Assembly: GCF_044704955.1 (NCBI RefSeq)
Contig: NC_091995.1
Coordinates: 17,918,001-17,982,000 of the forward strand
Reading direction: 5' to 3'
Source: Pristiophorus japonicus
Taxonomy: Eukaryota
DNA length: 64,000 nucleotides
In this document: positions 2,551 to 60,400 of the stretch, in pieces
Layout: every line of letters begins with the position of its first letter
How positions within the stretch are numbered: the first letter of the stretch is position 1
Position numbers and translations under genes: made by a program
The notes under the pieces: generated by a model
What the model was told of the DNA's origin: nothing
The model's database searches: none
What the model saw: only the letters and a program-made list of their open reading frames with translations

Positions 2551-5500
2551 TAGGGGAGGAAAAAGAGTGGGAGAGCGATAGTGATAGGGGATTCAATTGT
2601 AAGGGGAATAGATAGGCGTTTCTGCGGCCGCAACCGAGACTCCAGGATGGTATGTTGCCTCCCTGGTGCAAGGGTCAAGGATGTCTCTGAGCGGGTGCAG
2701 GACATTCTAAAAAAGGAGGGAGAACAGCCAGTTGTCGTGGTGCACATTGGTACCAACGACATAGGTAAAAAAAAAGGGGATGAGGTCTTATGAAACGAAT
2801 TTAAGGAGCTAGGAGCTAAATTAAAAATTAGGACCTCAAAAGTAGTAATCTCGGGATTGCTACCAGTACCACGTGCTAGTCAGAGTAGGATTCGCAGGAT
2901 AGCGCAGAAGAATACATGGCTTGAGCAGTGGTGCAGCAGGGAGGGATTCAAATTCCTGGGGCATTGGAACCAGTTCTGGGGGAGGTGGGACCAGTACAAA
3001 GCGGATGGTCTGCACCTGGGCAGGACCGGAACCAATGTCCTAGGGGGAGTGTTTGCTAGTGCTGTTGGGGAGGAGTTAAACTAATATGGCAGGAGGATGG
3101 GAATCAATGCAGGGAGACAGAGGGAAACAAAAAGGAGACAAAAGCAAAAGACAGAAAGGAGATGAGGAAAAGTGGAGGGCAGAGAACCCCAAGACAAAAA
3201 ACAAAAAGGGCCACTGTACAGCAAAATTCTAAAAGAGAAAAGTGTGTTAAAAAAACAAGCCTGAAGGCTTTGTGTCTTAATGCAAGGAGTATCCGTAATA
3301 AGGTGGATGTATTAACTGTGCAAATAGATGTTAACAAATATGATGTGATTGGGATTACGGAGACGTGGCTCCAGGATGATCAGGGCTGGGAACTCAACAT
3401 CCAGGGGTATTCAACATTCAGGAAGGATAGAATAAAAGGAAAAGGAGGTGGGGTAGCATTGCTGGTTAAAGAAGAGATTAATGCAATAGTTAGAATGGAC
3501 ATTAGCTTGGATGATGTGGAATCTATATGGGTAGAACTGCAGAACACCTAAGGACAAAAAACGTTAGTGGGAGTTGTGTACAGACCTCCAAACAGTAATA
3601 GTAATGTTGGGGAGGGCATCAAACAGGAAATTAGGGGTGCATGCAATAAGGGTGCAGCAGTTATAATGGGTGACTTTAATATGCACATAGATTGGGCTTA
3701 CCAAACTGGAAGCAATACGGTGGACGAGGATTTCCTGGAGTGCATAAGGGATGGTTTTCTAGACCAATATGTCGAGGAACCAACTAGGGGGGAGGCCATC
3801 TTAGACTGGGTGTTGTGTAATGAGAGAGGATTAATTAGCAAACTCGTTGTGCGAGGTCCCTTACGAAAGAGTGACCATAAATGTTGGAATTCTACATTAG
3901 GATGGTGAATGAAACAGTTAATTCAGAGACCATGGTCCAGAACTTAAAGAAGGGTAACTTTGAAGGTATGAGGCGTGAATTAGCAAGGATTGATTGGCGA
4001 ATGATACTTAAGGGGTTGACTGTGGATGGGCAATGGCAGACATTTAGAGACGGCATGGATGAACTACAACAATTGTACATTCCTGTCTGTCGTAAAAATA
4101 AAAAAGGGAAGGTGGATCAACGGTGGCTATCAAGGGAAATCAGGGAAAGTATTAAAGCCAAGGAAGTGGCATACAAATTGGCCAGAAATAGCAGTGAACC
4201 CGGAGAATGGGAGAAATTTAGAACTCAGCAGAGGAGGACAAAAGGTTTGATTAGGGCAGGGAAAATGGAGTATGAGAAAAAGCTTGCAAGGAACATTAAG
4301 ACGGATTGCAAAAGTTTCTATAGATATGTAAAGAGAAAAAGGTTAGTAAAGACAAACGTCGGTCCCCTGCAGTCAGAATCAGGGGAAGTCATAACGGGGA
4401 ACAAAGAAATGGCGGACCAATTGAACAAGTACTTTGGTTTGGTATTCACTAAGGAGGACAGTAACAACCTTCCGGATATAAGAGAGGTCAGAGGGTCTAG
4501 TAAGGAGGAGGAACTGAGGGAAATCCTTATTAGTCGGGAAACTATGTTGGGGAAATTAATGGGATTGAAGGCCGATAAATCCCCAGGGCCTGATGGACTG
4601 CATTCCAGAGTACTTAAGGAGGTGGCCTTGGAAATAGCGGATGCATTGACAGTCATTTTCCAACAGTCCATTGACTCTGAATCAGTTCCTATCGAGTGGA
4701 GGGTAGCCAATGTAACCCCACTTTTTAAAAAAGGAGGGAAAGAGAAAACAGGGAATTATAGACGGGTGAGCCTGACATCGGTAGTGGGTAAGATGATGGA
4801 ATCAATTATTAAGGATGTCATAGCAGCGCATTTGGAAAGAGGCGACATGATAGGTCCAAGTCAGCATGGATTTGTGAAAGGGAAATCATGCTTGACAAAT
4901 CTTCTAGAATGTTTTGAGGATGTTTCCAGTAGAGTGGACAAGGGAGAACCAGTTGTTGTGGTATATTTGGACTTTCAGAAGGCTTTCGACAAGGTCCCAC
5001 ACAAGAGATTAATGTGCAAAGTTAAAGCACATGGGATTGGGGGTAGTGTGCTGACATGGATTGAGAACTTGTTGTCAGACAGGAAGCAAAGAGTAGGAGT
5101 AAATGGGGACTTTTCAGAATGGCAGGCGGTGACTAGTGGTGTACCGCAAGGTTCTGTGCTGGGGCCCCAGCTGTTTACACTGTACATTAATGATTTAGAC
5201 GAGGGGATTAAATGTAGTATCTCCAAATTTGCAGATGACACTAAGTTGGGTGGCAGTGTGAGCTGCGAGGAGGATGCTATGAGGCTGCAGAGCGACTTGG
5301 ATAGGTTAGGTGAGTGGGCAAATGCATGGCAGATGAAGTATAATGTGGATAAATGTGAGGTTATCCACTTTGCTGGTAAAAACAGAGAGACAGACTATTA
5401 TCTGAATGGTGACAGATTAGGAAAAGGGGAGGTGCAACGAGACCTGGGTGTCATGGTACATCAGTCATTGAAGGTTGGCATGCAGGTACAGCAGGCGGTT

Positions 5501-6170
5501 AAGAAAGCAAATGGCATGTTGGCCTGCATAGCGAGGGGATTTGAGTACAGGGGCAGGGAGGTGTTGCTACAGTTGTACAGGGCATTGGTGAGGCCACACC
5601 TGGAGTATTGTGTACAGTTTTGGTCTCCTAACCTGAGGAAGGACATTCTTGCTATTGAGGGAGTGCAGCAAACGTTCACCAGACTGATTCCCGGGATGGT
5701 GGGACTGACCTATCAAGAAAGACTGGATCAACTGGGCTTGTATTCACTGGAGTTCAGAAGAATGAGAGGGGACCTCATAGAAACGTTTAAAATTCTGATG
5801 GATTTAGACAGGTTAGATGCAGGAAGAATGTTCCCAATGTTGGGGAAGTCCAGAACCAAGGGTCACAGTCTAAGGATAAGGGGTAAGCCATTTAGGACCG
5901 AGATAAGGAGGAACTTCTTCACCCAGAGAGTGGTGAACCTGTGAAATTCTCTACCACAGAACGTTGTTGAGGCCATTTCACTAAATATATTCAAAAAAGA
6001 GTTAGATGTAGTCCTTACTACTAAGGGGATCAAGGGGTATGGTGAGAAAGCAGGAATGGGGTACTGAAGTTGCATGTTCAGCCATGAACTCATTGAATGG
6101 TGGTGCAGGCTCGAAGGGCCGAATGGCATAATCCTGCACCTATTGTCTATGTTTCTTTGTTTCCATGTTT
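2551..6170 (+). mobile_element. Relatively intact 5'-truncated CR1 LINE: ORF1 SGNH-esterase C-terminus, ORF2, 3'UTR and (TCTATGTT)-like tail
   Basis: ORF1 motifs IGDSIVR, VHIGTND, DGLHL (2581-3084); ORF2 LNARSI, TETWL, YRPP, then 687-aa ORF 3881-5944 with KSPGPDG, QHGF, FADDTK, PHLEYC; frameshifts near 3550 and 3880, TGG>TGA at 5942. Confidence 0.96.
3881..5944 (+). pseudogene. CR1 ORF2 reverse transcriptase (longest open stretch, 687 aa)
   Basis: Canonical non-LTR RT motifs; separated from the endonuclease by a frameshift and ended by a premature stop. Confidence 0.93.
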
Positions 6171-7627: not shown

Positions 7628-9249
7628 ACGAAAATAACACATACTATATAGGATTATGATTAAATGTAAGCAGTTATGGAACTAGGTTTATTGAACAGTA
7701 ACCGGTATGAATGCTGAACATGTTGGTATCCATTTTAACAAATGCATGAATCTGTTTATTTTTTCGTATAGCACGCCTCTAAGAAGAGGGGACTAATAAA
7801 TTTCATAAAAAGTGATAAATGTTATGAACTGATACGAAAGAGCTTAATGTTAAGCATTGGAGATTTCAAGTATATGCGATTTAATCATTTCCATGGATGG
7901 TTCTCCGATCATCGGCGTTGAAGATCCCGGAGGACCTCGAGTTTTCACCAAAGTTACGGCGGGAGAGTGAACCAACTCTGTGAAAATTGCGCCAGCTTGT
8001 CCATCCAGGACATCTCATCATTGAGACGGATTGTGACGGCTCCTCTTACTTCACCGAAGCGTACAGCACCGCTTCTCGATTCACGCAGCACTCTGTTTGA
8101 TTTCTCTCCTGCAGATTCAGTGTGGCGTATTGCAACTTGTCCTCACCCTCTCTCTATTGAGATGAAAGTGCTTCATTGTTGAATATTGTAAATTGAATAG
8201 AGCGTTTGGCATCAAACACAGTGTAATGATTAAAACCGACATATTGTGTAGTTTCAGTTGAAGAGAATTCACACCACTGAACATTCTACATATAATTAGA
8301 ATATTTATATGTCTGTCAAACGTTACAGGATTGAATACACCGTCCTAAATATTCCTGTTCTTTTGAATATATCACAGCGTTTCAAAGATTGCACAATTTA
8401 AATAAACAGCAAGGGGAAATAATAGACCTAAATAGCGCATAATTACAAATATAAAGGTAAAATCCAAGCATTTAGAAGCATTTCACAATTCACACTTAAT
8501 GACTTCACGAACAATGGATCAGTCAGCATTTAGGAAGGGCAGATTGACATTTGGGAAGAACCGTTCAGATCTTGCCATTCGCATGAAGGGTTCTAGCCCA
8601 ACGCTTACCCTGTGTTTTCTCTTTCAAGTGCTGATCTACTTTGCATATCCTGCATTTTCTGTGTTGACTTCAGATTTCCAGCGTTTTCTGGTTTCCTTCT
8701 TATCTCGACTGATCAAATGATGTGTATTTTTGTATGTGTGCGTGTGTTTGTGTAGAATCCTGGGTGCCCCTAGTTTGTGATCTATGTTATGCTTCCTCTG
8801 TGTACCTCGTGTATGTGCATGCACCTGCCTGTAGGTGTGTGCCTATTTGCATTTGCGAGTGTCTGTGTGTGTGAGTGTGTCTTTCTGTGTGTGTACAGGC
8901 GTTTGAATTCTCAGACTGTCAGATTTCATTTCCTGTTTGGCTCTCTGACGATTTGTAACTAATATTTTAATCCCCGGCTCTATTGGAATTTGATTTTCAA
9001 CTTGCTGTGCCTTTGCATAAAATTGGCGATCGGGATGCCCGCAATGCTAGCTTTACGCCTGTGTGGCAAGTTGAGAATATACCCCACAGCTACAAGCAGA
9101 AATGTTGAGGCCGTCCAATCTAGTTTCTATTTTAGATTGTTACACCCGACGGAGAGAATTCTTTATATTATAATCACCGTGGCAAAGTAAACAAGAGGTC
9201 AGTAGTTTTAAAAAAAAACATATATAGCCAAAGTCATTGCGCTACATAC

Positions 9250-9290
9250 CCGATGAGGATTTCGGCACTCAGAGCTGTCATTATTCCCCT
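9250..9290 (-). other. Gene A relic 41-nt tail exon (EGNNDSSECRNPHR), downstream of the stop codon
   Basis: tttatag|41 nt|gtatgt; same length and phase (1->0) as 23886-23926 in B and 53983-54023 in C. Confidence 0.7.
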
Positions 9291-9305
9291 CTATAAAGCA
9301 TAGAA

Positions 9306-9732
9306 AAAAGAAAGACTTGCATTTATATGGCGCCTTTGATGACCACCCGACTTCACAAATCGCGATACAGGGAATAAAGTACTTCTTAAAAAAGTTGAGT
9401 TACTGTTTAATGTAGGAAACGTGATCATGACCAGATAATCTGTTTTACTGATGTTGATTGAGGAATAAATAATTGTCAGGAAGAGATAACTCCCCTGCTC
9501 TTCTTCAAAATAGTGCCTGGGATCTTTTATGTCCGCATGAGATCGGAGACATGGACTCTGTTTAACGTCTCATCTGAAATATAGCAATCCTCCCACCACC
9601 CCACAGTGCAGCGCTCCCTCAGTACTGCACTGTCAGTGTTAGTTTAGATTTTTCTGCTATAAGTCCCTGGAGTGGGACACAAACCTACAACCTTCCGACT
9701 TAGAGGCGAGGTTGCTACCAACTGAGCTACGG
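9306..9732 (-). mobile_element. tRNA-derived SINE, family 1 (DeuSINE/SacSINE1-like); other copies ~23940-24357(-), 31785-32215(-), 49590-50030(+), partial 61715-61880(+)
   Basis: Pol III A-box head (tagctcagttgg) and degenerate B-box; 3' tail ..gcgccatataaatgcaagtctttc similar to L2 3' ends; several mutually similar copies in the window. Confidence 0.8.
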
Positions 9733-10279
9733 GAAATGACCCTGTGTAATTTAATATTACTTGAACTGTGTGTACAATACAACGCCACATAATGCGCCAT
9801 ACCTATAGCGCTATAATGCACTGTATTATTATGTTATAGGATCCAGCATAACATGGTAGAAAACAGTAGGACGCAATAAAATAAAATACAATAGGATGAA
9901 CTGCATTGCACAACAAGAAAACGATGCAATTAATATGGTCCAACATGTAATACTCTCCCACAGAATGTAAAACAGCGTAAGGTTTTTCCGTTTAACTGCT
10001 AATTTTAAACTGATGAGCAAAGCAATTTGATATGAGCGCACCCAGCATTCGTACGAGAACAGATTGACATCTAGACTAATCAATTATAATATACGATATA
10101 TCAATGAAACGAACATTACAATATTATGTAATAATTTCTCACAAATATCAGCACGTGATAAGAAAATCTTTCAAAATATTATATTAGCCTTATCCCTTAA
10201 CTCCTCAAATTGACTTTGTGACTAAGACGGCTAACAGGTTTCACTCAATAGCCATTCTAGAATCAAGAGTTATTCAACC

Positions 10280-10570
10280 ATAGAATCATACAGTGCAGAA
10301 GGAGGCCATTCGGCCCAACATGCCCGTGTCGTCTCTCTGAAGGAGCTACTAATTAGTCCCGCTCCCCCTGCTCTTTCTCGATAGCCCTGAAAAAAATCCC
10401 ACTTTAAAGTAGTTATCCAATTCCCTTTTGAAAGTTACTATTAGCTCTCACCAACGTTTCTGGCAGTGCATTCCAGATCATAACCACTCGCTTAGTAAAA
10501 TAATATCTCCTCATCTCCAAACCTGGCTGCTTTATGCCAGTTATCTTAAATTTGTGTCCTCTGGTTACCA
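10280..10570 (-). mobile_element. CR1 3'-end fragment (shared with 24895-25180)
   Basis: TRGHKFK..RYYFTKRVVMIWNALP plus tail. Confidence 0.8.
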
Positions 10571-10594
10571 GACAGAATACACTAAAACAAAACA

Positions 10595-10955
10595 TTCGTT
10601 CGCGGAATGTGGGCTTTGCTTAGCAAGGCCAGTATTGATTGCTCATCCCTAGTTGCCCTTGGAAGGTAGCGACAATCCACCAATTCAGAGGGCAGTTAGG
10701 AGTCAACGACATTTCTGTGGGTCTGAAGTCACTTTAAGGCCAGACCAGGTAAGGATGGCAGACGTCCTTCCCTAAAGAGACATTTGACAATAGTGAACCA
10801 GGTGGGTTTTATGACAATCTGATAGTTACTAGTTTTTTTTATACCAGATTGATTTCATTTTAATGAATTTAAATTCCCCAGTTGCCATGGATTATTAGTC
10901 CAAATTTCTAGGATTTTTAAGCCAGTAACAAATCCAGTATGCTAATGTACCCGCT
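10595..10955 (-). mobile_element. SINE family 2; other copies ~25203-25578(-), 59345-59730(-), 60680-61050(+)
   Basis: Shared core (..ggtctggccta..gtgactcca..cagcaatg..) and a 3' tail matching the LINE 3' ends at 15670-15870 and 57365-58115. Confidence 0.7.
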
Positions 10956-11136
10956 AAATAATCAGACAGAACAATACTGAACTCATGGTTAATGTGTTAT
11001 AACTGATGGACAAGGAAATTAACCAGATTATTAATTAATATCAAATGAAATCGAAGGAGTAAGTATTGGGTGTCTGCTAAAAGTGACAGGTTGTAAACAG
11101 TTCTTTCTGTTACACACCTGTTTCACGGATCACTGG

Positions 11137-11152
11137 CTAGAGCGGATCTATT
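11137..11152 (-). CDS. Gene A last coding exon (35-nt exon 11152-11118; K-IDPL-stop)
   Basis: tgttgctccag|35 nt|gtgtgt; TAG at 11139-11137 aligns to TAT (Tyr) in B. Confidence 0.7.
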
Positions 11153-14100
11153 CTGGAGCAACAGAGGACATCAGCAAAGTGATGCATTCACAAAATAAAA
11201 TACGCTGAAGAAATAGAAAGTGGATTCTTAAAAAGTAGTTCTATGTAAACAATTACTTCCTGGGTTGCTGAAGAGCGACTGTGAGCAGGGGAAGACAAAG
11301 AACAGTCAAAGAGCTGAGGTTATTGATTATTTCAGTCGCTTCTTATAGATATTAATTAGTATCGAATAAATTGAATCACATTTTGTGGGCAATTTTAACC
11401 AAATCCACGGAGGAACGGACGGGATCGGGTGCAACGTTGGGTTCACATTCCGCCTGATTTTGAAATAAGTTGGCGAGCAATATAGGGCGGTATTGAACCC
11501 GGCGTTTCATCTGATTCGGTTGGTTTCCCATCCGGTGCATTAAGATGAAATTACCAAAGAATTTGTCAATCACAAGGAATTCAGTAGGGTTCCAATTAGT
11601 GCTGTTACCTGTCTTACGACGCCGGCTGGCAACAACTAAAGTGACTATAACCATGATCAGGAGAGGCACGGCTCGCACAGCAAAGACGAATGGTGTGATC
11701 TTTAGATTGGACTGGCCGTTGCTGCCCTCTTCACCATCTGTGTGTAATTGTTAAGGTTCATTGTGAGACAGACCAGTCAAGAGCAGGGCAATGATCAAAT
11801 TGAGATTTAGCATCAGCAAATGTGACACGGATACTAATCCCTCTTGATATGGGCGATTATATTCATACTTAACATTGGCATACTTCAAACAAGGCCATCG
11901 ATTAAAATGCAAAATGTCACCGGTGGTCAACTGCAGCGTTTCCTTTCCTTGAAGTAACACTGGGAGAATTTTAATGTAAGGATGCTTAGTGGGCTGGTAC
12001 CCAAATCGTTTATTTTAAAAGGGATGTGGTTGGGGTGGGGAAGGGGGGGACGGGGCGGGTGGGTGTGGACGACCGTGTGAGTTCCGTTATCATAGGAAAA
12101 GTAATACGCTATTTAACCCCTCAAGCTTGCTCCGCCATTCAATGAGATCATAGCTGATTTGCAACCTAACTCCATATTCCTGAGTGCCTTTGTTTAACAA
12201 AAAGTTATCTATCACAGATTTTAAATTTACAATTGACTCAGTATCAATTGCCATTTGTGAAAGACAGTGCCAAACTTCGACCACCTATTGTGTGTAGAAG
12301 TGTTTCCTAACTTCGCTCTTGAAAAGTCTGCTTCTAAATGTTAGACTATGCCTCCGGTCCTAGAATCCCCAACTAGCTGAAATAGATTATCTGCATCTTT
12401 CCTATGTGTTACCCTTAATATCTTGAGAGTGTTGCTCCTCCCGCCGAGTTTTCCTGAATTCACTAGACCCTGGAGATTCATGCGGCCCCGAGCACGAACG
12501 AGAAAATTGTCCCCTCATACTTATGGGATGCTTAAGACAAACATCTTGATATTAGATTGCCGAATCTTGGTGGTCAACGCGGTTCTTTCGTGAATCCATC
12601 TTTGCATTTAGATGGACCGCAATGTATTCATTTCTATTGACACACATAACTCTATCTGCCTCTACATCCATTTACAGGCTGGCAATGACATCTAACTTAT
12701 CGACGGATTGACCTGTTATTCCTAATATTGACACGCTGCAATTTCAAGGCTCACGTGTTGCTCTCGGAAAGGGTCTGCAGTTTTCGCCTTACACACTGCA
12801 ACTGCGTTGACCACTGGTCTATAGCCCTACATAAAATGATACCCAACTGAATCTCATTAATATCATCCATCTATTTATTCTAAAAGAAATAATTCTCAGT
12901 ATACGGGCGTCTCGGGCAAGGTTGGCTTTAATTGCCCTTCCCTAATTGCCCTTGGTAAGATTTTGGTTGGCCTTCTGCTTGAACCGCTGCAGTCTATGAG
13001 GTGAAAGTGAACCCACAGTGCTGTTAGGGAGTAGTTACAGGATTTTTAAAGGAACTGCGATACAAGGTCAAGTCAGGATGGCGTGTGACTTGGAGGAGAA
13101 ATTGCTCCCATGCAGCTGCTGCCCTTATCCTTCGAGGTGGCGTTGGTCGCGGGTTTGGGAGTTCCAATTGATTTAATGGATCATTTGGCTATATTGACAA
13201 TATTATTCCCTCCAATCCCATATGATTGCGTTCAATTGCATTCGTAAGAATATCTCCACCAATCCAAACTTACCTTGATCACCATGTTTCACGAGAAGTA
13301 TTGTGCCTGTTCCGTATGCAGTACCGATTCGCGCGAGCTCCACTTTGCAAATATAGAAACCTGTATCTCGGAGGCCCAGTTGGATTATTCTAATAGACGC
13401 TTTTTTCCTTTGGCGGAAATCCTCTTCGTCTGCGCGGAACACTCTACCTCTGTATTCGTCTGTGCTGTTGGAAACTTCAATTCCATGTTTGGAGCCTCGG
13501 TGCCATTTGTAGCCGCCGATTCCTGCGGGACCTTCGTATGTACAGACCAGGTCCGCTGTCTGACCCACGGTTTTGGTGAGAGATTGCGGGCTCTGAAATA
13601 CTGCGATGTTTCCACCATTAACTGTGGAAATGGGAAAAACAGACCATTTATAAATAGGCAGTGCACGTCTTTGCGTTAAAGCACGCCGTGGAAAGCCTCG
13701 TTTTAATCACATATCCTTCTGAGTATTTTGGGTAAGGTATTAATGGCCTTTAATTTGGGGTATAATAAACAGAAAATGCTGGAAATACTCAGCAGTTCGG
13801 GCAGCATTTGTGGAGAGAGAGCAACAGAGTTAACGTTCCGGGTCGATGGCCTTTTACCAGACCTGGAAAACAGGTAGAGATGTGCCAAGTTTTGAGCAAG
13901 TGCAGGGAGCAAGGAAAGAGGGGAGGGGCGGAAAGAAAAGGGAAGGTCTGTGATAGGGTGAAAGGCAGGAGAGATTAATTCACAAAAGGAATGAAGGTGC
14001 AAGGCATAAGGAGATTGTAATGGGACAAGTAATGAAACAAAAGGTGTCTGGAAGAGGTATAAATGGTTAACTTGAGGAACATTGGAACTGGAAATGGAGT

Positions 14101-15551
14101 GTCTTTTGATGTTGTGTGCACTCCTAGGTCAAGTACAGAATGGATCTGGAATAAGGTACCTCTGCCCCTTTCGAAATAAGCATTAATTTAATTTCAGTAC
14201 TCCCGATTGCGTCGGCGTGATATATATATAAGAACATAAGAATTTAAGAATTAGGAGCAGGAGTAGGCCATTCGGCCCGTCGAGCCTGCCCCGCCATTCA
14301 ATAAGATCACCACTGATCTTCCACCTGAACTCCACTTTGCCGCCTGATCTCCATATCACTTGATTCCCTATGACTCCAAAAATCTATCTATCTCACCCTT
14401 GAATATATTCAGAAACTGAGCATCTACAGCTCTCTGGGGTAGAGAATTCCAAAGATTCATGACCCTCTCAGAGAAGAAATTCCTCCTTATCTCCGTCTTA
14501 AATGGCCGACCACTTATTCTGAAACCATGCCCTCAGTTTCAAAATTACCCCCGAGTGAGTCAGTCCCACTCCTTTCCACCATATTTTTGCAATATGTTCC
14601 TTCAAGTATTTATCCACATTCCCTTTTCAAGGCTGCTATTGAATCTGTATCCACCACGCTATGAGGCAGAGTACTCTGGCAATATGTACGTTAGGAAGGA
14701 AAATACATTGTGCGCTCCTGGACCGGAGACAATAAATCTAGTTACCCGAGAGCCGATCCGTGTCTCACGGTTAGCTTGCAATCACTCCCTACTCTTATAA
14801 TCTCACTTTTTCTCACACACACGTATGCACACGTACGATTGGAATGCATTTCTCTCTGTGTGTTCTATGCACAATGCGCTCCTCAACACGCTTTTTACAT
14901 TCTTAGCCTTCACGTCTTGATTTATTTTGTCTTCCCTTCCAATATTGCCAGCCTTGATGCTGCTCTGCGCCATGTGGCATTGGCCTTTCAGCTAAATGCC
15001 TCAATTCAAAATAGGCAACCTCGAAAGCGTTAGCTTCTCTATGCTGACTCCGGCTTAACTGCGGGATTGATTATATTACCAGGACTTGATTCATTACCAC
15101 GGCGCTGAACTTTTAAGATGGCAATTCTCGTGTCTATGAGAATGTCCGCACGAACCTGATGTTGTTTTTTAATTGCAGGCGAGCTGACCATGAAAATAAA
15201 ATTAGTTGAATCTACAATCTGGTATTGAGAACCGCAAATAGCTGATAGCAGAATAAGATTGCATCAGGTTCACAGATGAACTAGTGTTCACATACATAAA
15301 AAAGAAGAGCACATCGCTATGGGTAATTAATAACTAGTTAAATCATGCAATATTTCATTAACGTCATTATGAAATCAATAGAAATGATAATCAGTCTCTG
15401 CGGCCACGCCGCAGCGCCCAGTTTACGCGCAGGGGCTAAGTTGATATTCTCCCCTATGTTTTTATATGAACCTGGTGTGCAAGAAATTGATATTAAAACG
15501 CTGCTTACCGAAGAACATAGTGATTGCCCAGGAAACTGCAGCCCAATGCAT
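11137..15551 (-). CDS. NCR3-like: Gene A: NKp30/NCR3-like single-IgV activating-type receptor; exons 15551-15509, 13621-13274, 11737-11609, 11278-11257, 11152-11137
   Basis: All junctions GT-AG and in phase; leader MHWAAVSWAITMFF, VJ-type IgV, TM FVFAVRAVPLLIMVIVTLVVA with Arg, tail SRRRKTVALQQPRKIDPL*. Confidence 0.85.
11257..11278 (-). CDS. Gene A 22-nt cytoplasmic micro-exon (VALQQPR)
   Basis: Strong polypyrimidine tract tctttgtcttcccctgctcacag; donor gtaatt; phase 1->2. Confidence 0.75.
11386..11556. mobile_element. Palindromic MITE-like element; related copies ~26010-26160 and 57148-57327
   Basis: Termini ggcaattttaacc...gatgaaattacc form an imperfect inverted repeat; internal self-complementarity. 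Confidence 0.5.
11609..11737 (-). CDS. Gene A stalk + transmembrane exon (with Arg)
   Basis: cacacag|129 nt|gtaaca; DGEEGSNGQSNLKITPFVFAVRAVPLLIMVIVTLVVASRRRKT. Confidence 0.88.
12090..12430 (-). mobile_element. CR1 3'-end fragment (shared with 26662-27000)
   Basis: VVEVWHCLSQMAIDTESIVNLKS corresponds to the ORF2 C-terminus, followed by 3'UTR. Confidence 0.75.
13274..13621 (-). CDS. NCR3-like: Gene A Ig V-set (VJ-type) exon, NKp30-like
   Basis: ttccacag|348 nt|gtaagt; B-strand Cys, IGGYKW, EVSNSTDEYRGRV, DTGFYICKVE, GTGT; pattern matches NKp30 IGSVTW / EVRNGTPEFRGRL / DASIYVCRVE / GNGT. Confidence 0.93.
13765..14070. mobile_element. Interspersed repeat (probably a Penelope-like element end); copies ~28323-28625 and 62925-63160, degenerate reverse copies ~8500-8700 and 23145-23330
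   Basis: Shared start aacagaaaatgctggaaatactcagc..gagagagcaacagagttaacg; family assignment is from recollection only. Confidence 0.5.
14230..14550 (-). mobile_element. CR1 3'-end fragment
   Basis: (TAAGAACA)-type tail and ORF2 C-terminal sequence. Confidence 0.8.
15509..15551 (-). CDS. Gene A leader (signal peptide) exon
   Basis: agaATG..43 nt|gtaagc; MHWAAVSWAITMFF; phase 1 matches the V exon; conserved in B. Confidence 0.82.
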
Positions 15552-22254: not shown

Positions 22255-23885
22255 GCGAAAATGTCGCATACTATATAGGATTATTGCGAAATGTAAGAAG
22301 TTACGTGATGACACTAGGTTGATTGAACAGTAACCGGTTCGAACGATGAACATGTTGTTACCCATGTTAACAGATGCAGGAACCTGTTTATTTTCTCGGA
22401 TAGCACACCCCTAAGAATAGGGCATTAATACATGTCATATAAATGTGATCAATGTTCTCAACGAATACTACAGAACCTAATGTTAAAGCATTGGAGATAT
22501 CAAGTCCTTGCGATTGAATAATTTCCATGGAATGTTTTCCGAACATCCGGCGTTGAAGATCCCAGAGGGCCCCGAGTTTCCGCCGAAGTTACAGCGGGAG
22601 AGCGGAACAACTCTGCGAAAATTGAACCCGCTTGTCCATCGGGGAGGGGGTTTCATCATTAAAACGGATTGTGATGGCTCCGCTTACTTCACTGACGAGT
22701 ACAGCACCGCTTCTTCATTCTCGCGAGGCTCTGTTTGATTCTTCTCCTGCAGATTCAGTGTAGCGTATTGCAGCATGTCATCGCCCTCTTCCTATCGAAA
22801 TGACAGTGAATCAGTGTTGAATATTGTAAATTGAATAGAGCGTTTGGCATCAAACATTGTGCAATGATTAAAACCGACATGTGCAATTGAATAGAATTCG
22901 CCTCAGTGAACATTCTACATATAATTAGAATATGACTCCGCCCCTCAAATATTGTAACAGGATAGAACACGCCGTCCTAAATGTTCCTGTTCTTTTGAAT
23001 ATATTTCAGCATGTAAATATAGCACAATTTAAATAATAAACAAGGGGATATAGTCGACCTAAAAGCTGATAATTACAAGTATAATTTTAAAATCCATACA
23101 TTTAGAAGCAATTTACAAATCACACTTAATTAATTCATGAACAGTGGGTCAGTCAGCATCTGGGAAAGACAGATTGACCTTTGGGAATAACCGTTCAGGA
23201 GAACTTTCGGTTCGAATGAAGGGTCCCAGCCCGCCGCTTACCCTGTGTTTTCTCTTTCAAGTGCTGACCTATTTTGCATATCCTGTATTTTCTGTTTTGA
23301 CTTCAGATTTCCAGCATTTGCTGGTTTCCTTCTTGTCTCGACCTATCAAATGATGTGTATGTTTGTATGTGTGCGTGTGTTTGTGTAGAATCCTGGGTGC
23401 CCCTATTTTGGGGTCTATGTTATGCTATGTTATGGTCTGTGTACCTGCTGTATGTGCATGCACCTGCCTGTTGGTGTATGCCAATTTGTCTTTGCGAGTA
23501 TCTGTCTGAATGTGTCTTTCTGTGTGTGTGCAGGCATTTGAATTCTCAGTCTGTCAGATTTCATTTCCTGGTTGGCTCTTTGTCTAATTATAACTAATAT
23601 TCTAGTCCTCAGCTCTATTGCAATTTGATTTTCAACTTGCCGGCGCTTGTGCATAAAACTGGTGTTCGGGATGGGCCGCAATGCTAGCTTTACACCTGTG
23701 TGGCAAGTCGAGAATCTACCCCACATCTTCAAGAGCAAACGTTGAGGCCGTCCAACCTGGTTTCTTTTTTAAATTGTTGCACCCCACGAAGAGAATTGTT
23801 TATATTATAATCTACCTGGAAAAGTAAATAAGCGGTCAGTAGTTTTAAAAATAACATAAATAGCCCAAGTCAATGTGCTACATAC

Positions 23886-23926
23886 CCGATTTGGTCTTCT
23901 GCTCCCAGAGCGGTCATTATTCCCCT
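23886..23926 (-). other. Gene B relic 41-nt tail exon (EGNNDRSGSRRPNR)
   Basis: tttatag|41 nt|gtatgt; homologous to 9250-9290. Confidence 0.68.
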
Positions 23927-25740: not shown

Positions 25741-25775
25741 CTGCTTTACAGACCGCTGCATAGACCGGATCTAGT
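25741..25775 (-). pseudogene. Gene B relic 35-nt Tyr-motif exon (LDPVYAAVCKA), donor mutated GT>GA
   Basis: ttttttgcttcag|35 nt|gagggt; homologous to 11118-11152; lies after B's stop codon. Confidence 0.68.
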
Positions 25776-25884
25776 CTGAAGCAAAAAAGAACACCAGAAA
25801 GGTTAGGCATTCAAAAAAAATACATTGAAGAGAAAGAAAGTGGATTCTTAAAAAATAGTTTTATATAAACAATTATCTCGTGGG

Positions 25885-28800
25885 TTAACGAAGAGCGACT
25901 GTGAGCAGGAGAAGACAAAGATAGAACAGTTAAAGAGCTGAGGTTATTGATTATTTCAGTCGCGTCTTACAGATATAATTGGTATCGAATGAATTGAATC
26001 ATATTTTGAGGGCAATTTTAAACAAACCTACGGAGGAACGGACAGGATCGGGTGAAACTTTGGTTTCACACTCCGCCTGATTTTGAAATCAGCTGGCGAA
26101 CAATATTGGCAGGATTAAACCCGGTTCGTTTCCCACCCGGTGCGTTAAGATGAAATTACCAAAGAATTTGCCAACCACATGGAATTCAGTAGAGTTACAA
26201 TTAGTGCTGTTACCTCTCTTACGACGCCGGCGGACAACAACTACAGTGATTATAACAATGATCAGGAGAGGCGCTGCATAGACGAGTGGCCGTTGCTTTG
26301 CTTTGGACTGGCCGTTGCTGCCCTCTCCACCATCTGTGTGTAAATATAAAGGTTCATTGTGAGACAGAGCAGTCAAGAGCAGGGTAATGTTCACATAGAG
26401 ATTTAGCATCAGCAAATGTGACACAGATTCTAATCCCTCTTGAAGTGGGCGGATATATCCACACTCAACACTGGCAGACATCAAACTGGACCATCGCTTA
26501 AAATGCAATATGTCACAAGTGGTCAACTGGATTGTTTCCGACCCTTGAAGTAATACTGGGAGAATTTTAATGTAGGAATGCTTAATGAGTTGGTACCAAA
26601 TGCATTGATTTTAAACGGGATAAGGTGGGGTTGGAGCTGGGGCGGCCGTGTGAGTTCCGCTATCATAGGAAAGGGTTAAGCCATTTAACCCCTCAAGCCT
26701 GCTCCGTCATTCAATGAGATCATAACTGATTTGCAACCTAACTCCATATTCCTTAGTGCCTTTGTTTAATAAAAATATATCAACCACAGCAATTAAATAT
26801 GCAATTTACCCAGCATCAATTGCCATTTGCGAAAGACAGTGCCAAACTTCTACCACCCTTTGTGTGTAGAAGTGTTTCCTAATTTCGCTCTTGAAAAGTC
26901 TGGTTCTAAATTTTCGGCTATGCCCCCGGTCCTAGAATCCCCAACTAACTGAAATAGTTTATCTGCATTTTCCAATCTGTTCCCCTTAATATCCTGAGAG
27001 TGTTGCTCCTCCTACCGAGTTTTCCTGAATTCACTAGACCCTGGAAATACAGGCGGCCACCCCAGCACGAACGAGAAAATTATCCCCTCATAATTATGGG
27101 ATGCTTAAGACAAAATGAACATGTAGATATTAGATTGCCGAATCTGGGTGGTCAACGTATTTATTTCGTGGTCCCAACTTTGCAATTGGATGGAGCGCAA
27201 TATATTAATTCATATTTACATGCACAAATCTATCTGCCTCTATCTCCATTACAGGATGGCAATGAAAGCGAACTTAACATTGATGTGTTGACATGTTTAT
27301 TACTAATATTGGCACGTTGCAATTTCAAGGTTCACGTATTGCTCTTTGCCTTGCACACTGTATCTGGGTGGACTACTTGTCTATAGTCCTACCTAAAATG
27401 ATACACAACTAAATTTTATGAATATCCTCCATCTATTTATTTTTGAAAATCTTTCTCAGGATACGGGTGTCACTGGCGAGGCTGCCATGTATTGCCCATC
27501 CCTAATTGCCCTGAGAAGGTGCTGGTTGGCCTTCTTCTTGAACCGCTGCAGTCCGTGAGGTGAAGGTGCTCCCACCGCGCTGTTAGGGAGGGAGTTCCAG
27601 GATTTTAAAAGGAACTGCGATACAAGGTCAAGTCAGGATGGTGTGTCAATTGGAGGGGAACGTGCAGGTGGTGGTGTTCCCATGTACCTACTGCCGTTAT
27701 CCTTCGAGGTGGTGGAGGTCGCGGGTTTGGGAGTTTCAATTGATCGAATGGATCATTGACCTATACGGCCAATATTACTCCCTAGAAAAATAGCATACGG
27801 TTGTGTGCAATATCATTCGTAAGAATAACTCCACCAATCCAAACTTTGGTCACCACCTTGCACGGTCAGTGTTGTGCCGGTTCCGTATACTTCACCGATT
27901 TTCACGAGCTGTACTTTGCACAAATATAACCCTGTATCTCCCGGTTTCAGCTGGATTATTCTAATGGATGCGTTTTTCCTCGTGCTGAAATCTTCTCTAC
28001 TTGCCCCCAGGACCCTGCCGCTGTATTCGCCTGTGCTGTTGGAAACTTCAATTCCATGTTTGGAGCCTCGGAGCCAACTGTAGCCGCCGATTCCTGCGGG
28101 ACCCTCATATGTGCAGCCCAGTTCCGCTGTCTGTCCCACGGTTTTGGTGAGCGATTGCGGGCTCTGAGATACTGTGATATCATAACAGTAAATGCTGCAA
28201 GTGGGTAAAACAGACGATATATAAATAAGCAGTGCACGTGTTTGCCTTAAAACACGGCGCGGAAGGATTAGTTTTAATCAAATATTGTTTTGAGGATTTA
28301 TGCTCTTTAATTGGGGTATAATAACAGAAAATTCTGGAAATACTCAGCAAGTCAGGCAGCATTTGTGGAAAAAGAGAAGCAGAGTTAACGCTCCTGAACG
28401 ATTATCTTTAGCCAGAACTGGAAACAGGTAGAGATGTGACATGTTTTAAGCAGGTGCAGGGGGCAGTGAAAAAGGGAGGGAAGAAAGAACAAAAAGGAAG
28501 GTATGTGACAGGGTGGAAGGCAGGAGAGATTAACTAACAAAACGGATGATGGTGCAAGATATAAGTCGATAGTAATGCCACAAGTAAAGAACAAAATGAG
28601 TCTAGAAGAGGTATAAATGGTTAACGAGGGATATTGGAGTTGGAAATGAAGTGACTTTCGATGTTGGGTGCATTCCTAGGTAAAGTACAGAATGGATCTG
28701 GTACAAACTATCTCTACCCCTTTCCAAATAATAAGCATTAACTTTAATTTCAGTACTCCCGATTGTGCCGCCTTGGGGTATATATAGGAATATTAAAACG

Positions 28801-35129: not shown

Positions 35130-35545
35130 AAAGATAGAATCATATAAATCTACACCACAGAAGGAGGACATTTCGGACCGTAGTGCCTGTGCCAGCCGAT
35201 AAAGAACTAAACCACCCTCGTTCAGCAACCCTGAAGATTACATATAAATCTTTGATGAATGAACAATGGCGGAGAGGTAAAGAATATCCGACCCAACCAA
35301 AACGCCCCACACAACTATGACACCGCAACATTGTACACTCCACCCTAACCGGAGCCATGCAATCTCCTGGGAGAGGCAAAAACCAGATGCAAACACAGGC
35401 CAGTTGGGGAAAATAATCTGGGAAAATTCCAATCTGACCAATTCAGGGGATCAAAACTAGTCCAAAAGATCACCCTGGCCGTAGTCGATTCCCTGCAATA
35501 CTTACCAGCGTATCTGCACCAGCCAACAAGAGGTTACCCAGTTTA
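35130..35545 (-). mobile_element. Isolated long 3'UTR of a CR1 subfamily (inverted relative to 36860-37270)
   Basis: Reverse-complement similarity, e.g. aaccggagccatg..atctcctgggagaggcaaaaacca vs tggtttttgcctctcccaggagatcacatggctccggtt. Confidence 0.8.
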
Positions 35546-35549
35546 ATCC

Positions 35550-57400: not shown

Positions 57401-60400
57401 TCAATGGCATTACCATCGCCGAATCCTCACCATCAACTTCCTGGGGGCATCAACATTGACCAGAAACTTAAATGGCCCAGCGACTTAATACTGTGGGTAC
57501 AAGAGCAGGTCAGAGGCTGGGTATTCTGCAACGAGTGTTTCACCTCCTGACGGCCACCCGGCCCCCCACCTGCACCGCGCCCCAAAGTATTTCTACCTCC
57601 AACAAGGCACAATTCAGGAGTGTAATAGAATTTCTCCACTTGCCTGACTGAGTGCAGCTCCAACAAGACTCAAGAAGCTCGACAGCATCCAGGACAAAGC
57701 AGCACGCCTGATTGGCACCCCATCTACCACATTAAATGTTCACTCCCTCCACCCCCAGCTGCAATGTGTACCATCTGCAAGATGCATGGAGCAACTCGCC
57801 AAGGCTTCTATGGCAGCACACCCCAAACCCACAACCTCTACCTAAGAGGACAGGGGCAGCAGGCGCATGGGAACACCGTCACCTGCAACTTCCCCTCCAA
57901 GCCACACACCATCCTGAATTGGAAATATATCGACCATTCCTTCATCATCACTGGGTCAAAATCATGGAACTCCCTATCAGCACCGGGAGCAGAAGACCTT
58001 CTACGTAAGGACTGCAGCGGTTCAAGAAGGCAGCTCACCGCCAAGGTTAATTAAGGAAGGCCAATAAATGCTGTCCTCAACAGCAACGTCCACATCCCAG
58101 GAACAAATACAAAAAATAGCAAGCAGCAAGCTACTGAGGTTGTTCCTCAGCAATTCACACACGTATAATATTGAGGACTCATTGAAATTTGTCAACTGGG
58201 AAAATTAAGTGATTCTTTAATCGGCGGTGCTCACCATCTACATCAGTGTCATCATAGAGCGGCCCGTTCCTTAGGGACAACAGACAAATACAGAAAATTA
58301 GTGCCACAGCATAGTTAGTAAACTAACTATAGAACAATTATAATACAACAGGTTGAAAATTTAAACTCTGAGATTCACTGACCTTCCAAATTGCGGGGGA
58401 ACATCTGTAAAAATAAAGTTAAGCATGAAAGATTTGTAGCGTTAATGCAATTTGTCTAAAGACATTTTGAGTACAGGAAACTGTTTCCATTTGCGGGAGG
58501 GTTAGTAACCTGAGGACATAGATTTAAAATAATTGGCAAAAGAACCAGAGGGGAGTTGAGGAGATTTGATTTATGCTGTGAGTTGTTATGATATGGAGTG
58601 CACTACCTGAAAGAATGGTAGAAGCACGATCCCTTCATCTACTGCACCCAGATGTTCTTTTCCTAACACCCCACCCCCGCTCCCCGCCCTTCGCAGGTTC
58701 CAGCCCAGATGTTCTCACCTTCCATCCCACCCAACATGCTCCGGCCTGATATATTCTGTTCCTTTCCCCTGCTTCCCCGGCTCGATATTCTCTCCCTCAC
58801 CTCCTCGATGCTCCTTCGGCGATATTCTCTACCCCGCCGCCCCACCCCATGCTCCAACCCCGATCTTCTCTCACCGCACCGCCGCCCCACGCCCCGCCGC
58901 CCGATGATCCTGTCCTGAACTTCTCCACGATGTTCCAGCCCCGTTGCTTCCATCCCTCATCCCCAATCCTCCTCCGGCCAGCGAACCTCCCCCTCCCACT
59001 ATTGCACGCATCTGATCCGCCCCCCACCCAACCTCTCTGTAGTTTGGTGCCACAGGCCTCTCCATCTAGGTGGCTGCGGGTGGGGAATCAAAGGTTGGAA
59101 ATGAAAATCAGGCCCCACCGTTAAGTTCAGCAGAGCTCGCGGTAAACCCGTCCCCGCGGGTTTCTCAGCCGCTTTCATGCACCTCTGCCTCCCGATTAAA
59201 ATTCAGGCCATTGTATCATGCAATCTCCTACCCTAGTGAGACCAGTTAGTTCGGTGTGTCTCACTGATCCAAACACTGGCTACCACTGGTACTGTGATTC
59301 AGTAGTACACCAGAGCAACGTAAACGCTACGCATGTTTTTTTTTGTATTCGTTCACTGGATGTGGGCATTAACTGGCAAGGTAATAGTTATTGCTCATCC
59401 CTAATTGCCCACGAGAAGGTGGTGTTGAGCTGCCTTCTTGAACAACAGAGGGCAGTTAAGAGTCGACCAACATTGCTGTGGGTCAGAAGTCACATATAGG
59501 CTAGACCAAGTATGAATGGCTGATGTCCTTCCCTAAAGGACATTCGTGAGCCAGATGGGTTTTTATGACAATCCGGTTGTTTCATGGTCACCATTACTGA
59601 TCCTAGCTTTTTCAGTCCAGATTGATTTAATTAACTGAATTTAAATTCCCCAGCTGCCATGGTGGGATTTTTAAAACTCGTGTCTCCGGATCACTAGTCC
59701 AGTAACATAATCACTATGCTACCATTCCGCGTGTGCATCACTCACCAGCTGGATTAATTTCATCACAGGTGCGAAAAGCGCTCTCCATCCAGGGGCTGGG
59801 AAAGAAGAAAAGAAAATCACATAGCTAGGGGAAAAAAAATCCAGCTAATTAAATAACGTTTTACCCTCTATAACCACGAACCAACCTTTGTGCTTGCGGA
59901 GCTAACTCTGTGGGATTAAAACTCAAAAATTAAGGTTTATCCATTGATGCAAGCAAGACATTTGATACTGTGAAAAAAGATTAAAATTATATAGACCTCT
60001 TATGTCCATCTAGGAACAATAATCAGTAAAACTACTGAAGTCCTTTCCGAACAATAATTGGTAATTAAAAAAATAATGCTTAAATGACTATTTAATATAT
60101 CGACCACTTAAATACTCACCATTAAAATGAATGTTACTGCAAGGCGCAATATTGCTTTGGGATTAAAACAGAAAAGTGAAAAGGTGTCAATGGATTGCAT
60201 ACCTAAATGCATATCAATTCAATAAAAACACCAAGAGAAGTGTCATCTTCACTTCAATATTCATTGACCGTTGTAAGCGTGCAAGGTCGAGGGCTGCAGG
60301 AATAAAAGGTGATGTAGAAAGTGTTACAACTTAACTACGGGCTTGTGGTAGCTTAATGGTTATAAGAACATAAGAACAGAAGAAATAGGAGCAGGATTAG

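What the first reader, a model, noticed from the sequence alone, without database searches (positions are those of the whole stretch)
11118..11152. Gene A tail ends exactly at the former signalling tyrosine (TAT-equivalent codon is TAG)
Seen: A reads GAT CCG CTC TAG where B reads GAT CCG GTC TAT (DPVYAAV) and C module 3 reads GGG CCG CTC TAT. The downstream 41-nt exon still has intact splice sites and an open frame. Established: short-tailed activating KIR and Ly49 arose from long-tailed forms by tail truncation together with a charged TM residue. Inference: A derives from a receptor with a Tyr tail and was converted to adaptor-only signalling by one substitution. Retained downstream introns could also expose the mRNA to NMD.
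Basis: partly seen in the sequence, partly recalled or inferred. Interest (0 to 1): 0.78.

Follow-up and report, generated by a model that had tools for sequence, protein, structure and literature searches.

The report
Shark NKp30-like receptor tail cut short
A shark immune-receptor gene of the NKp30 family, descended from an inhibitory form, has a stop codon where its relatives have a tyrosine and a new charged residue in its membrane anchor; this is the classic recipe for turning an inhibitory receptor into an activating one, but nothing here shows whether the gene is expressed.

Summary
On the minus strand, gene A's 35-nt micro-exon (11152-11118) reads GAT CCG CTC TAG, with the TAG at 11139-11137. 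Paralogue B reads TAT and gene C cassette 3 reads TAT at the same codon. DNA contigs of two runs from one sample match the window there.

Two exons further on (8153-8046), gene A still has an intact last exon with two canonical ITIMs, LQYATL and VLYASV. It is in frame with the 41-nt exon. Apart from the TAG, A therefore encodes a complete inhibitory-type NKp30/NCR3 receptor like those of horn shark and catshark.

The tyrosine that was hit is not an ITIM. It is N in horn shark and C in catshark.

A's transmembrane Arg (11675-11673) is derived, because four shark relatives have hydrophobic residues there.

Stop plus charge is the same pair of changes reconstructed for the first short-tailed KIR. 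A is thus a probable young inhibitory-to-activating switch. A null allele prone to nonsense-mediated mRNA decay (NMD), or skipping of the 22+35-nt cassette, is not excluded.

No RNA data could be had. Paired NKp30-family genes were already noted elsewhere in this genome by this scan.

The parts
15509..15551 (-). Gene A leader exon (MHWAAVSWAITMFF, phase 1, donor gtaagc)
   Evidence: It matches the leaders of nurse shark and catshark relatives.
13274..13621 (-). Gene A V exon, 348 nt. It encodes a V-set domain with the J-like YGTGT motif in the same exon.
   Evidence: for coordinates. Pfam V-set, E 1.6e-09; the best solved relatives are NKp30, E 2.4e-10.
11609..11737 (-). Gene A stalk/transmembrane exon, 129 nt (…PFVFAVRAVPLLIMVIVTLVVASRRRKT)
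11673..11675 (-). CGA codon for Arg inside the TM helix. It is the 6th residue of the best 21-residue hydrophobic window.
   Evidence: Relatives have hydrophobic residues here, and B lacks the codon through a 9-nt gap.
11257..11278 (-). 22-nt cytoplasmic micro-exon (V)ALQQPR(K), with an AG acceptor and a GT donor
   Evidence: It is homologous to horn shark ATRQQPAR.
11118..11152 (-). 35-nt cytoplasmic micro-exon, IDPL* then PVIRET. This is the stretch of the finding.
11137..11139 (-). TAG at the codon that is TAT in B (25762-25760) and in C cassette 3 (58256-58254)
   Evidence: Contigs of X1 and X3 are identical to the window over 10792-11244.
9250..9290 (-). 41-nt exon (E)GNNDSSECRNPHR. It is open and has AG/GT sites. 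It now lies behind the stop.
   Evidence: It is homologous to horn shark ETNNSSERRGTNGR.
8046..8153 (-). Last exon REGEDKLQYATLNLQERNQTECCVNREAVLYASVK*. It carries two ITIMs, at 8135-8118 and 8069-8052, and a TAA at 8048-8046. It is in frame with the 41-nt exon and now lies behind the stop.
   Evidence: tblastn, 71.9% identity to the horn shark tail, E 6.7e-11. Also.
25741..25775 (-). Gene B's copy of the 35-nt exon. It keeps TAT (LDPVYAAVCKA), but its donor is GA instead of GT.
25877..25898 (-). Gene B's copy of the 22-nt exon. It has an in-frame TAA (ALR*PT), and its donor is AT instead of GT.
22687..22791 (-). Gene B's last exon, with both ITIMs intact (LQYATL, VLYSSV)
58235..58269 (-). Gene C cassette-3 35-nt exon (NGPLYDDTDVD), the outgroup copy that carries TAT

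Best explanation
Gene A is a seven-exon, single-V receptor gene of the shark NKp30/NCR3 family that descends from an ITIM-bearing (inhibitory-type) ancestor. On A's own lineage, or in the A/B ancestor, two changes happened. An Arg appeared inside an otherwise inhibitory-type transmembrane helix. A T-to-G change turned a Tyr codon of the 35-nt tail micro-exon into TAG. If the 22-nt and 35-nt exons are spliced in, as they are in the nurse shark NCR3 record and the horn shark models, the product ends 18 residues after the membrane (SRRRKTVALQQPRKIDPL). It then lacks all tyrosines, and the two ITIMs become untranslated fossils. Such a protein would signal only through an ITAM adaptor paired with the Arg, as mammalian NKp30 does with CD3-zeta or FcR-gamma. 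The intact downstream exons suggest that the stop is young relative to the A/B duplication. The message would be a borderline NMD target. Shown: the sequence, the exon phases, the homology, the direction of the stop change and the derived Arg. Inferred: exon use, expression, adaptor pairing and activating function.
For: Family: the V exon matches Pfam V-set (E 1.6e-09). The four best solved relatives are all NKp30 (E 2.4e-10 to 3.4e-10), and the next hit is at 1.8e-05. The best named relative is nurse shark NCR3, QTT61898.1, at 65% identity.

Ancestry: A's tail exons align piece by piece with horn shark XP_067865393/5, as ATRQQPAR | PDPINAEIPEK | ETNNSSERRGTNGR | ...VQYATL...VLYATVK. All phases fit.

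Direction of the stop: B, C cassette 3 and C cassette 4 have TAT, and nurse shark has Tyr.

Derived Arg: nurse shark, brownbanded bamboo shark and catshark relatives have M/A/V/L between FVFA and VPLL, where A has VRA. The Arg sits at residue 6 of the hydrophobic window. That is the same position as in the R-TM, short-tailed family members P0006 (whitespotted bamboo shark) and P0097.

Gene otherwise intact: the ATG, 6 of 6 donors (GT) and 6 of 6 acceptors (AG) are present, and there is no frameshift. About 8.8 lesions would be expected if A had drifted neutrally since the duplication (rough).

The base is real in reads of one sample.

Precedent: the short-tailed KIR ancestor arose by Lys in the TM plus a stop in the membrane-proximal ITIM (PMC2213150, passages read).
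Against: No RNA evidence exists. None of the 7 listed runs is on record as RNA. The two small runs laid, X5 and X6, hit only repeats.

The stop lies 19+41 = 60 nt before the last exon junction, so a fully spliced message should be prone to NMD. Established activating receptors usually avoid this.

A's V domain has changed as fast as that of the broken paralogue B. There are 8 A-derived and 8 B-derived replacements, with 14 ambiguous. Its non-synonymous difference (0.159) equals the intron mismatch (0.148). Sequence therefore gives no proof that the ectodomain is under purifying selection.

The downstream ITIM exon looks better kept in A than in B, with 1 against 5 derived replacements and 3 ambiguous. 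This fits continued use as well as it fits youth.

Only one individual was seen.
Confidence: 0.45

Rival explanations
1. Gene A is a recently disabled inhibitory receptor gene, either a null allele or a young pseudogene. The TAG is an ordinary nonsense mutation at a mutation-prone Tyr codon. The message is removed by NMD. The Arg in the TM is a second, damaging or neutral, change without adaptor function.
For: Tyr codons carry 2 of the 18 one-step nonsense paths in this part of the tail. The stop is 60 nt upstream of the last junction. A's V domain has as many derived replacements as broken B, 8 against 8. These include changes at three positions that are invariant in five outgroups. Paralogue B shows that this lineage does decay: it has an in-frame TAA, three lost donors and a 9-nt TM deletion. 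One contig in each of X1 and X3 leaves out a base at 9284, inside the 41-nt exon. This may be a second lesion or an allele.
Against: A has no other lesion. All 12 splice dinucleotides, the ATG and every reading frame are intact, against about 8.8 lesions expected under lifelong neutrality. The two derived changes are exactly the pair that defines the inhibitory-to-activating switch. The Arg sits at the position seen in bona fide R-TM family members.
Confidence: 0.3
2. The 22+35-nt cassette is optional or skipped in gene A. The two exons total 57 nt and are phase 1 to phase 1, so splicing the TM exon directly to the 41-nt exon keeps the frame. That gives an Arg-TM receptor that still carries both ITIMs, a dual-motif receptor like NKp44-1 or KIR2DL4. 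The TAG then matters only in cassette-including isoforms, and it acts as a splicing-controlled switch between long and short tails.
For: Phase arithmetic supports it. In both A and B the cassette exons are the fastest-changing coding parts. Nucleotide identity is 78% and 73%, and the 35-nt exon has 8 non-synonymous and 0 synonymous differences. The 41-nt and last exons stay open, with intact sites, in both genes. B has lost both cassette donors but none of the later sites. A's ITIM exon is well kept, with 1 derived replacement against 5 in B. Horn shark relatives are annotated with several tail isoforms. NKp44 uses splicing to include or drop its ITIM (PMC6514059, passages read).
Against: The nurse shark NCR3 record (QTT61898.1, P0005) and all three horn shark isoforms include the cassette. 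None of the three horn shark isoforms differs by the 19 residues that skipping would remove. A's cassette has canonical sites and keeps QQP as in horn shark. If the 1-nt gap at 9284 seen in read contigs is real at this locus, the long frame is broken anyway.
Confidence: 0.17
3. The G at 11137 is an assembly or sequencing error, or a private somatic or heterozygous variant, and the gene really reads TAT.
For: Only one sample's reads were available, and they may be the ones the assembly was built from. The same read contigs disagree with the window at 9159 and 9284, so the assembly is not perfect here.
Against: Contigs of X1 and X3 span 10792-11244 with 0 other letters at word depths of 10.1 and 7.95. 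No alternative letter is listed at 11137.
Confidence: 0.03

Closest known systems
Shark NCR3 (NKp30) gene family, e.g. nurse shark NCR3 QTT61898.1 (Kinlein et al. 2021, Immunogenetics 73:333; title seen in reference lists only)
   Same: It has a single VJ-type V-set domain encoded in one exon, with 65% identity over the V exon. The TM core is the same (PFVFA...VP.LII). The tail is likewise built from a 22-nt-type piece and a 35-nt-type piece containing ...PLY....
   Different: The nurse shark protein has no Arg in the TM. It keeps the tyrosine (NPLYADM) and ends a few residues later. Gene A has Arg and a stop at that tyrosine, with ITIM exons still present downstream. I could not read the paper, so what it says about activating and inhibitory members is not checked.
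Horn shark NCR3-like / SIRP-like models XP_067865393, XP_067865395 and XP_067865396, and catshark XP_038671257
   Same: Tail exon order is the same as in A: 22-nt type, 35-nt type, 41-nt type, then a last exon with two ITIMs (VQYATL/MQYAQL and VLYATV). A's last exon is 71.9% identical to horn shark and 64.1% identical to catshark.
   Different: These models read through the 35-nt-type exon, with N (horn shark) or C (catshark) where B has Y and A has the stop. They have no Arg in the TM core.
Origin of short-tailed activating KIR from inhibitory KIR (Abi-Rached & Parham 2005, PMC2213150)
   Same: The reconstructed switch consisted of a positive charge introduced into the TM plus a stop codon in the membrane-proximal tyrosine motif. 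Rat Ly49 intermediates carry both a charge and an ITIM (passages read). Gene A shows the same pair of changes.
   Different: It is a different protein family (NKp30-type V domain, not KIR D domains) in a different vertebrate class. In A the stop sits in an internal micro-exon, two introns before the gene's end. The hit tyrosine is not an ITIM.
Mammalian NKp30 (NCR3) and NKp44 (NCR2)
   Same: NKp30 has one V domain and an Arg in the TM that pairs with CD3-zeta or FcR-gamma, with no signalling motif of its own. NKp44 combines a TM Lys with an ITIM that splicing includes or drops (PMC6514059, passages read).
   Different: A's TM and tail are of the shark inhibitory type, with Arg arising in place and not by inheritance of the mammalian-type TM. 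Adaptor pairing is untested.

Membership tests
NKp30 / NCR3 family | Single extracellular V-set Ig domain | tested here: met
   Pfam V-set, E 1.6e-09, above the curated cut-off at 38.4 against 26 bits
NKp30 / NCR3 family | V domain closest to NKp30 among solved structures and named proteins | tested here: met
   The top 4 PDB sequences are all NKp30 (E 2.4e-10 to 3.4e-10), and the next is a VNAR at 1.8e-05. The best single-V relative is named NCR3, from nurse shark, at 65% identity.
NKp30 / NCR3 family | Germline-joined VJ: the J-like G-x-G-T motif is encoded in the V exon | tested here: met
   YGTGTILLV lies inside exon 13621-13274
NKp30 / NCR3 family | MHC linkage and B7H6-type ligand | not testable with these tools
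   The window holds only three family genes and repeats. No ligand assay is possible.
Activating, adaptor-coupled immunoreceptor | Basic residue inside the transmembrane helix | tested here: met
   Arg (CGA, 11675-11673) is residue 6 of FVFAVRAVPLLIMVIVTLVVA
Activating, adaptor-coupled immunoreceptor | Short cytoplasmic tail without tyrosine motifs in the expressed protein | tested here: inconclusive
   The predicted tail has 18 residues and no Tyr if exons 11278-11257 and 11152-11118 are used. Exon use could not be checked because no RNA run was found.
Activating, adaptor-coupled immunoreceptor | Physical and functional pairing with an ITAM adaptor | not testable with these tools
   This needs co-expression experiments.
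Inhibitory ITIM receptor | ITIM ([SIVL]xYxx[IVL]) translated in the cytoplasmic tail | tested here: not met
   Two ITIMs exist, at 8135-8118 and 8069-8052. They lie behind the TAG at 11139-11137 in the cassette-including reading. They would be met only if the 57-nt cassette is skipped.
Pseudogene | Several disabling lesions (frameshifts, lost splice sites, stops) | tested here: not met
   There is one stop only. The ATG, 6 of 6 GT donors and 6 of 6 AG acceptors are present, and there are no frameshifts. Paralogue B, by contrast, has about five lesions.

The most novel reading that the evidence does not exclude
Gene A is a receptor caught in the act of switching sign. The TAG may be a segregating allele, so that the same sawshark locus encodes an ITIM-bearing, Arg-TM dual receptor in some animals or isoforms and a short-tailed activating receptor in others. 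This would be an allelic or splicing-controlled inhibitory/activating switch like KIR3DL1/S1. It would have been made in place by two point changes, in a lineage that split from ours over 400 million years ago.
Probability: 0.15. Interest if true: 0.6.

Novelty: new member of a known kind. Interest (0 to 1): 0.4.

Why it matters
Paired activating and inhibitory receptors are a recurring theme of innate immunity. How they arise has been reconstructed mainly for mammalian KIR and Ly49. Gene A offers a shark example in which both steps, charge gained and tail cut, are visible while the old ITIM exons are still intact. It could therefore show whether the same two-step route operates in the oldest jawed vertebrates and in the one NK receptor family conserved from sharks to humans. 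It also warns annotators. The tail is made of 22-, 35- and 41-nt exons that ORF finders miss, and the true ITIMs lie about 3 kb beyond the stop.

Tried and rejected
1. Looking for the species' own annotated protein. The search for homologous proteins with the V exon gave nothing. With a longer stop-free stretch it gave only nurse shark NCR3. No gene model or isoform evidence for gene A itself was obtained.

2. RNA evidence. The one run search listed 7 runs, and none is on record as RNA. X5 and X6, which are small runs of unknown kind, laid only on repeats. Exon use and NMD therefore stay untested.

Changes were polarised with protein outgroups only, and no branch-specific dN/dS was possible.

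4. Key papers were not held: Kinlein et al. 2021, Flajnik et al. 2012 and Ohta & Flajnik 2015. I saw only their titles in reference lists. What I recall of their content is not used as evidence. Supplements were not consulted.

5. A full-text search for Pristiophorus together with NKp30 or NCR3 terms was run. None of the 10 papers listed holds the genus name. This is no proof that the locus is undescribed.

6. Intronic polyadenylation as an escape from NMD. Only ATTAAA hexamers are found, at 10864, 9755 and 9411. At least the first lies in sequence shared with B or in a repeat. This is not informative.

7. Rejected: the idea that the TM exon was imported from an activating gene. A's TM matches the inhibitory-type core of nurse shark, bamboo shark and catshark relatives, not the R-TM of P0006.

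8. Rejected: dN/dS of 0.46 for the V exon as proof of constraint. Synonymous difference (0.30) exceeds the intron mismatch (0.148), and the non-synonymous difference equals it.

Full report
**What is there**

The window carries three single-V immune-receptor genes on the minus strand. tblastn with gene A's V exon finds three copies:
- A at 13619-13275, 100% identity.
- B at 28181-27846, 73.2% identity.
- C at 63633-63313, 45.8% identity.

All 3 of 3 V exons match Pfam V-set. For A's V exon, the four best solved relatives are all NKp30 (E 2.4e-10 to 3.4e-10), and the next hit is a shark VNAR at 1.8e-05.

A full HMMER scan of 1.84 billion representatives gave 249 proteins at E <= 0.001. The closest single-V ones carry these source names:
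- Natural cytotoxicity triggering receptor 3, nurse shark, QTT61898.1, 65% identity.
- NCR3, brownbanded bamboo shark.
- NCR3-like or SIRP-like, horn shark.
- An uncharacterised catshark model.

Earlier notes of this scan call the genome the Japanese sawshark and report other NKp30-family pairs elsewhere in it. I did not verify the species.

A and B are tandem duplicates. 8968-14522 matches 23603-29078 at 79.9% identity, and further blocks match up to 15834 and 32602.

**Gene model of A**

I kept every step exon by exon.

| Exon | Coordinates | Length / note |
|---|---|---|
| Leader | 15551-15509 | MHWAAVSWAITMFF |
| V | 13621-13274 | 348 nt |
| Stalk/TM | 11737-11609 | 129 nt |
| Micro-exon | 11278-11257 | 22 nt |
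| Micro-exon | 11152-11118 | 35 nt |
| Micro-exon | 9290-9250 | 41 nt |
| Last | 8153-8046 | found by tblastn |

I found the last exon by tblastn with the tails of the horn shark, catshark and bamboo shark relatives. All six donors are GT and all six acceptors are AG. The phases run 1, 1, 1, 2, 1, 0, so every piece is in frame with the next.

**The observation**

In that frame the 35-nt exon reads A ATA GAT CCG CTC TAG, with the TAG at 11139-11137. B reads GAT CCG GTC TAT, and C cassette 3 reads GGG CCG CTC TAT.

DNA contigs of runs X1 and X3 cover 10792-11244 without a single differing letter. Both runs come from one sample, possibly the assembly's own. The G at 11137 is therefore not an obvious assembly slip. 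No second individual was available.

The last exon of A encodes REGEDKLQYATLNLQERNQTECCVNREAVLYASVK and then a stop. It holds two canonical ITIMs, LQYATL at 8135-8118 and VLYASV at 8069-8052.

A's tail lines up piece by piece with horn shark XP_067865393/5:

| Piece | Horn shark | Gene A |
|---|---|---|
| 22-nt type | ATRQQPAR | VALQQPRK |
| 35-nt type | PDPINAEIPEK | IDPL*PVIRET |
| 41-nt type | ETNNSSERRGTNGR | EGNNDSSECRNPHR |
| Last exon | ITIM exon | 71.9% identical |

Apart from the one stop codon, A is a complete inhibitory-type family member.

The tyrosine that was hit is not an ITIM; B reads DPVYAAV there. It is also not conserved among the closest relatives:
- Y in B, in nurse shark and in C cassettes 3 and 4.
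- N in horn shark.
- C in catshark.

All of these codons are one step from TAT where DNA is known, so TAT is the likely ancestral state and TAG is derived in A. Calling it the 'former signalling tyrosine' goes beyond the evidence. What the stop removes is above all the two ITIMs further on.

Landing on a Tyr codon is also unsurprising. Of 18 one-step nonsense paths in whole codons between the membrane and the first ITIM tyrosine, 2 are at this codon.

**The transmembrane arginine**

A's TM exon reads ...PFVFAVRAVPLLIMVIVTLVVASRRRKT. The Arg is CGA at 11675-11673, the sixth residue of the best hydrophobic window.

Relatives share the flanks but have hydrophobic residues in between:
- Nurse shark: PFVFAMAVLVPVLII.
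- Bamboo shark: TFVFAVMVIVPLLII.
- Catshark: SYAFALAVVVPLLII.

The Arg is therefore derived. The TM was not imported from an activating gene. B lacks the Arg codon through a 9-nt gap. Against the outgroups this looks like a deletion in B, so the A/B ancestor may or may not have had the Arg.

I scanned 59 family representatives that passed my filter of 150-330 residues with a clear TM. Several have an Arg at the same position and a short tail. Examples are P0006 (whitespotted bamboo shark), P0015 (bichir), P0061 (Bombina NCR3) and the P0097, P0108 and P0112 proteins with the LLLRA TM. Others have uncharged TMs and ITIM tails. Both designs are thus normal in this family.

**How it most likely works**

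If the 22- and 35-nt exons are used, the protein ends 18 residues after the membrane, without any tyrosine and with an Arg in the helix. That is the activating design. In mammals, NKp30's Arg pairs with CD3-zeta or FcR-gamma (PMC6514059, passages read).

The pair of changes is the one reconstructed for the first short-tailed KIR. [quoted passage not shown] Rat Ly49 relatives that carry both a charge and an ITIM serve as intermediates (PMC2213150, passages read).

The cassette exons are present in the nurse shark NCR3 record and in all three horn shark isoforms. This favours their use in A.

**Is A alive?**

For:
- A has one lesion only.
- The aligned A/B non-coding sequence shows a 14.8% mismatch and 29 indel events in 2,530 aligned bases. 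From this, a rough estimate gives about 8.8 disabling hits for a gene drifting neutrally since the duplication. For the part behind the stop the estimate is 2.25, giving a chance of 0.11 of none. The nonsense share used in that estimate is my assumption.
- B has about five such hits: a 4-bp loss of the V donor, a 9-nt TM deletion, an in-frame TAA in the 22-nt exon, and both cassette donors lost.

Against:
- A's V domain has as many derived replacements as B's. The count is 8 and 8, with 14 ambiguous, using five outgroups.
- The V exon's non-synonymous difference (0.159) equals the intron mismatch. The dN/dS of 0.46 therefore rests on an inflated synonymous value and proves little.
- The stop lies 19+41 = 60 nt before the last exon junction, so a fully spliced message should be prone to NMD.
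- A's ITIM exon is better kept than B's. There is 1 A-derived replacement against 5 B-derived, with 3 ambiguous. The numbers are small. They mean either a young stop or continued use of that exon.

**Rivals**

1. Young null allele or pseudogene (0.30).
2. Cassette skipping (0.17). The 22+35 nt add up to 57 nt and keep phase 1, so joining the TM exon to the 41-nt exon would give an Arg-TM receptor that still has both ITIMs. In both A and B the cassette is the fastest-changing coding part, while the later exons stay intact. NKp44 shows that splicing can decide whether an ITIM is included.
3. Sequence error (0.03).

My best reading is a young inhibitory-to-activating switch (0.45).

**An odd point**

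One contig in each of X1 and X3 leaves out one base at 9284, inside the 41-nt exon. Depth with the gap is 6.3 of 38.3 in X1 and 6.6 of 25.3 in X3. The same runs read C for T at 9159, at full depth. If this belongs to the locus, the frame behind the stop is already broken in that sample or haplotype. That would speak against the ITIM isoform. It could also come from a close paralogue or from an assembly error. I could not follow it up.

**Novelty**

The family, its micro-exon tails and its paired designs are known, or were noted before in this genome. The mechanism is the textbook one. What is particular here:
- Both steps arose in place, in an inhibitory-type gene.
- The ITIM exons survive as intact fossils.
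- The stop sits in an internal micro-exon.

I file it as a new member of a known kind, of moderate interest. It needs transcripts and population data.

Kinlein et al. 2021, Flajnik et al. 2012 and Ohta & Flajnik 2015 were not held. Overlap with what they describe is therefore unchecked, and supplements were closed.

Noticed in passing
window 9284 and 9159: Read contigs of X1 and X3 leave out one base at 9284, inside gene A's 41-nt exon. Depth with the gap is about 6.3-6.6, out of 38.3 and 25.3. The same runs read C instead of T at 9159, at full depth. This could be a second lesion or allele behind the stop, a paralogue's contig, or an assembly error.
   Followed up: no
window 25877-25898 and 25741-25775: Gene B's 22-nt exon has an in-frame TAA (ALR*PT; CAA in A). 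Both cassette donors are lost (GT to AT, and GT to GA). B's preserved tyrosine therefore cannot be reached by translation, and B is a poor model of a working Tyr tail.
   Followed up: yes
window 27846-27860: B's V-exon donor is removed by a 4-bp deletion. A GT nine bases upstream (AAG|GTGGTG) is in the same phase and could act as a cryptic donor. I looked at this by eye only.
   Followed up: partly
window 11609-11737 against 26215-26331: The TM exon and the two cassette exons change faster at non-synonymous than at synonymous sites between A and B. In the TM exon there are 17 non-synonymous and 3 synonymous differences. In the 35-nt exon there are 8 and 0. In the V exon, synonymous difference (0.30) is twice the intron mismatch (0.148).
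   Followed up: partly
window 59747-59776 (gene C): In one of gene C's tail exons the horn shark relative reads FSNYDEINPA where this genome reads FRTCDEINPA. Here too a tail tyrosine has become Cys.
   Followed up: no
P0151 (horn shark XP_067865396, isoform X3): After the 35-nt-type exon this isoform uses another exon encoding DHINLYDVIPP... and then runs in a different frame. Tail splicing in the orthologous gene is therefore variable.
   Followed up: no
window 9258-9645, 10228-10615, 11974-12167, 12944-13137: Introns of gene A hold very high-copy repeats. One, near 9650-9730, has a tRNA-like head. Summed contig word depths reach about 236,000, against about 8-10 for unique sequence.
   Followed up: no
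window 385-5944: There are long plus-strand ORFs with reverse-transcriptase-like and endonuclease-like sequence, for example 3881-5944 (687 aa). They are LINE-type retrotransposon copies, with partial copies at 19003-20354 and 33242-39152.
   Followed up: no
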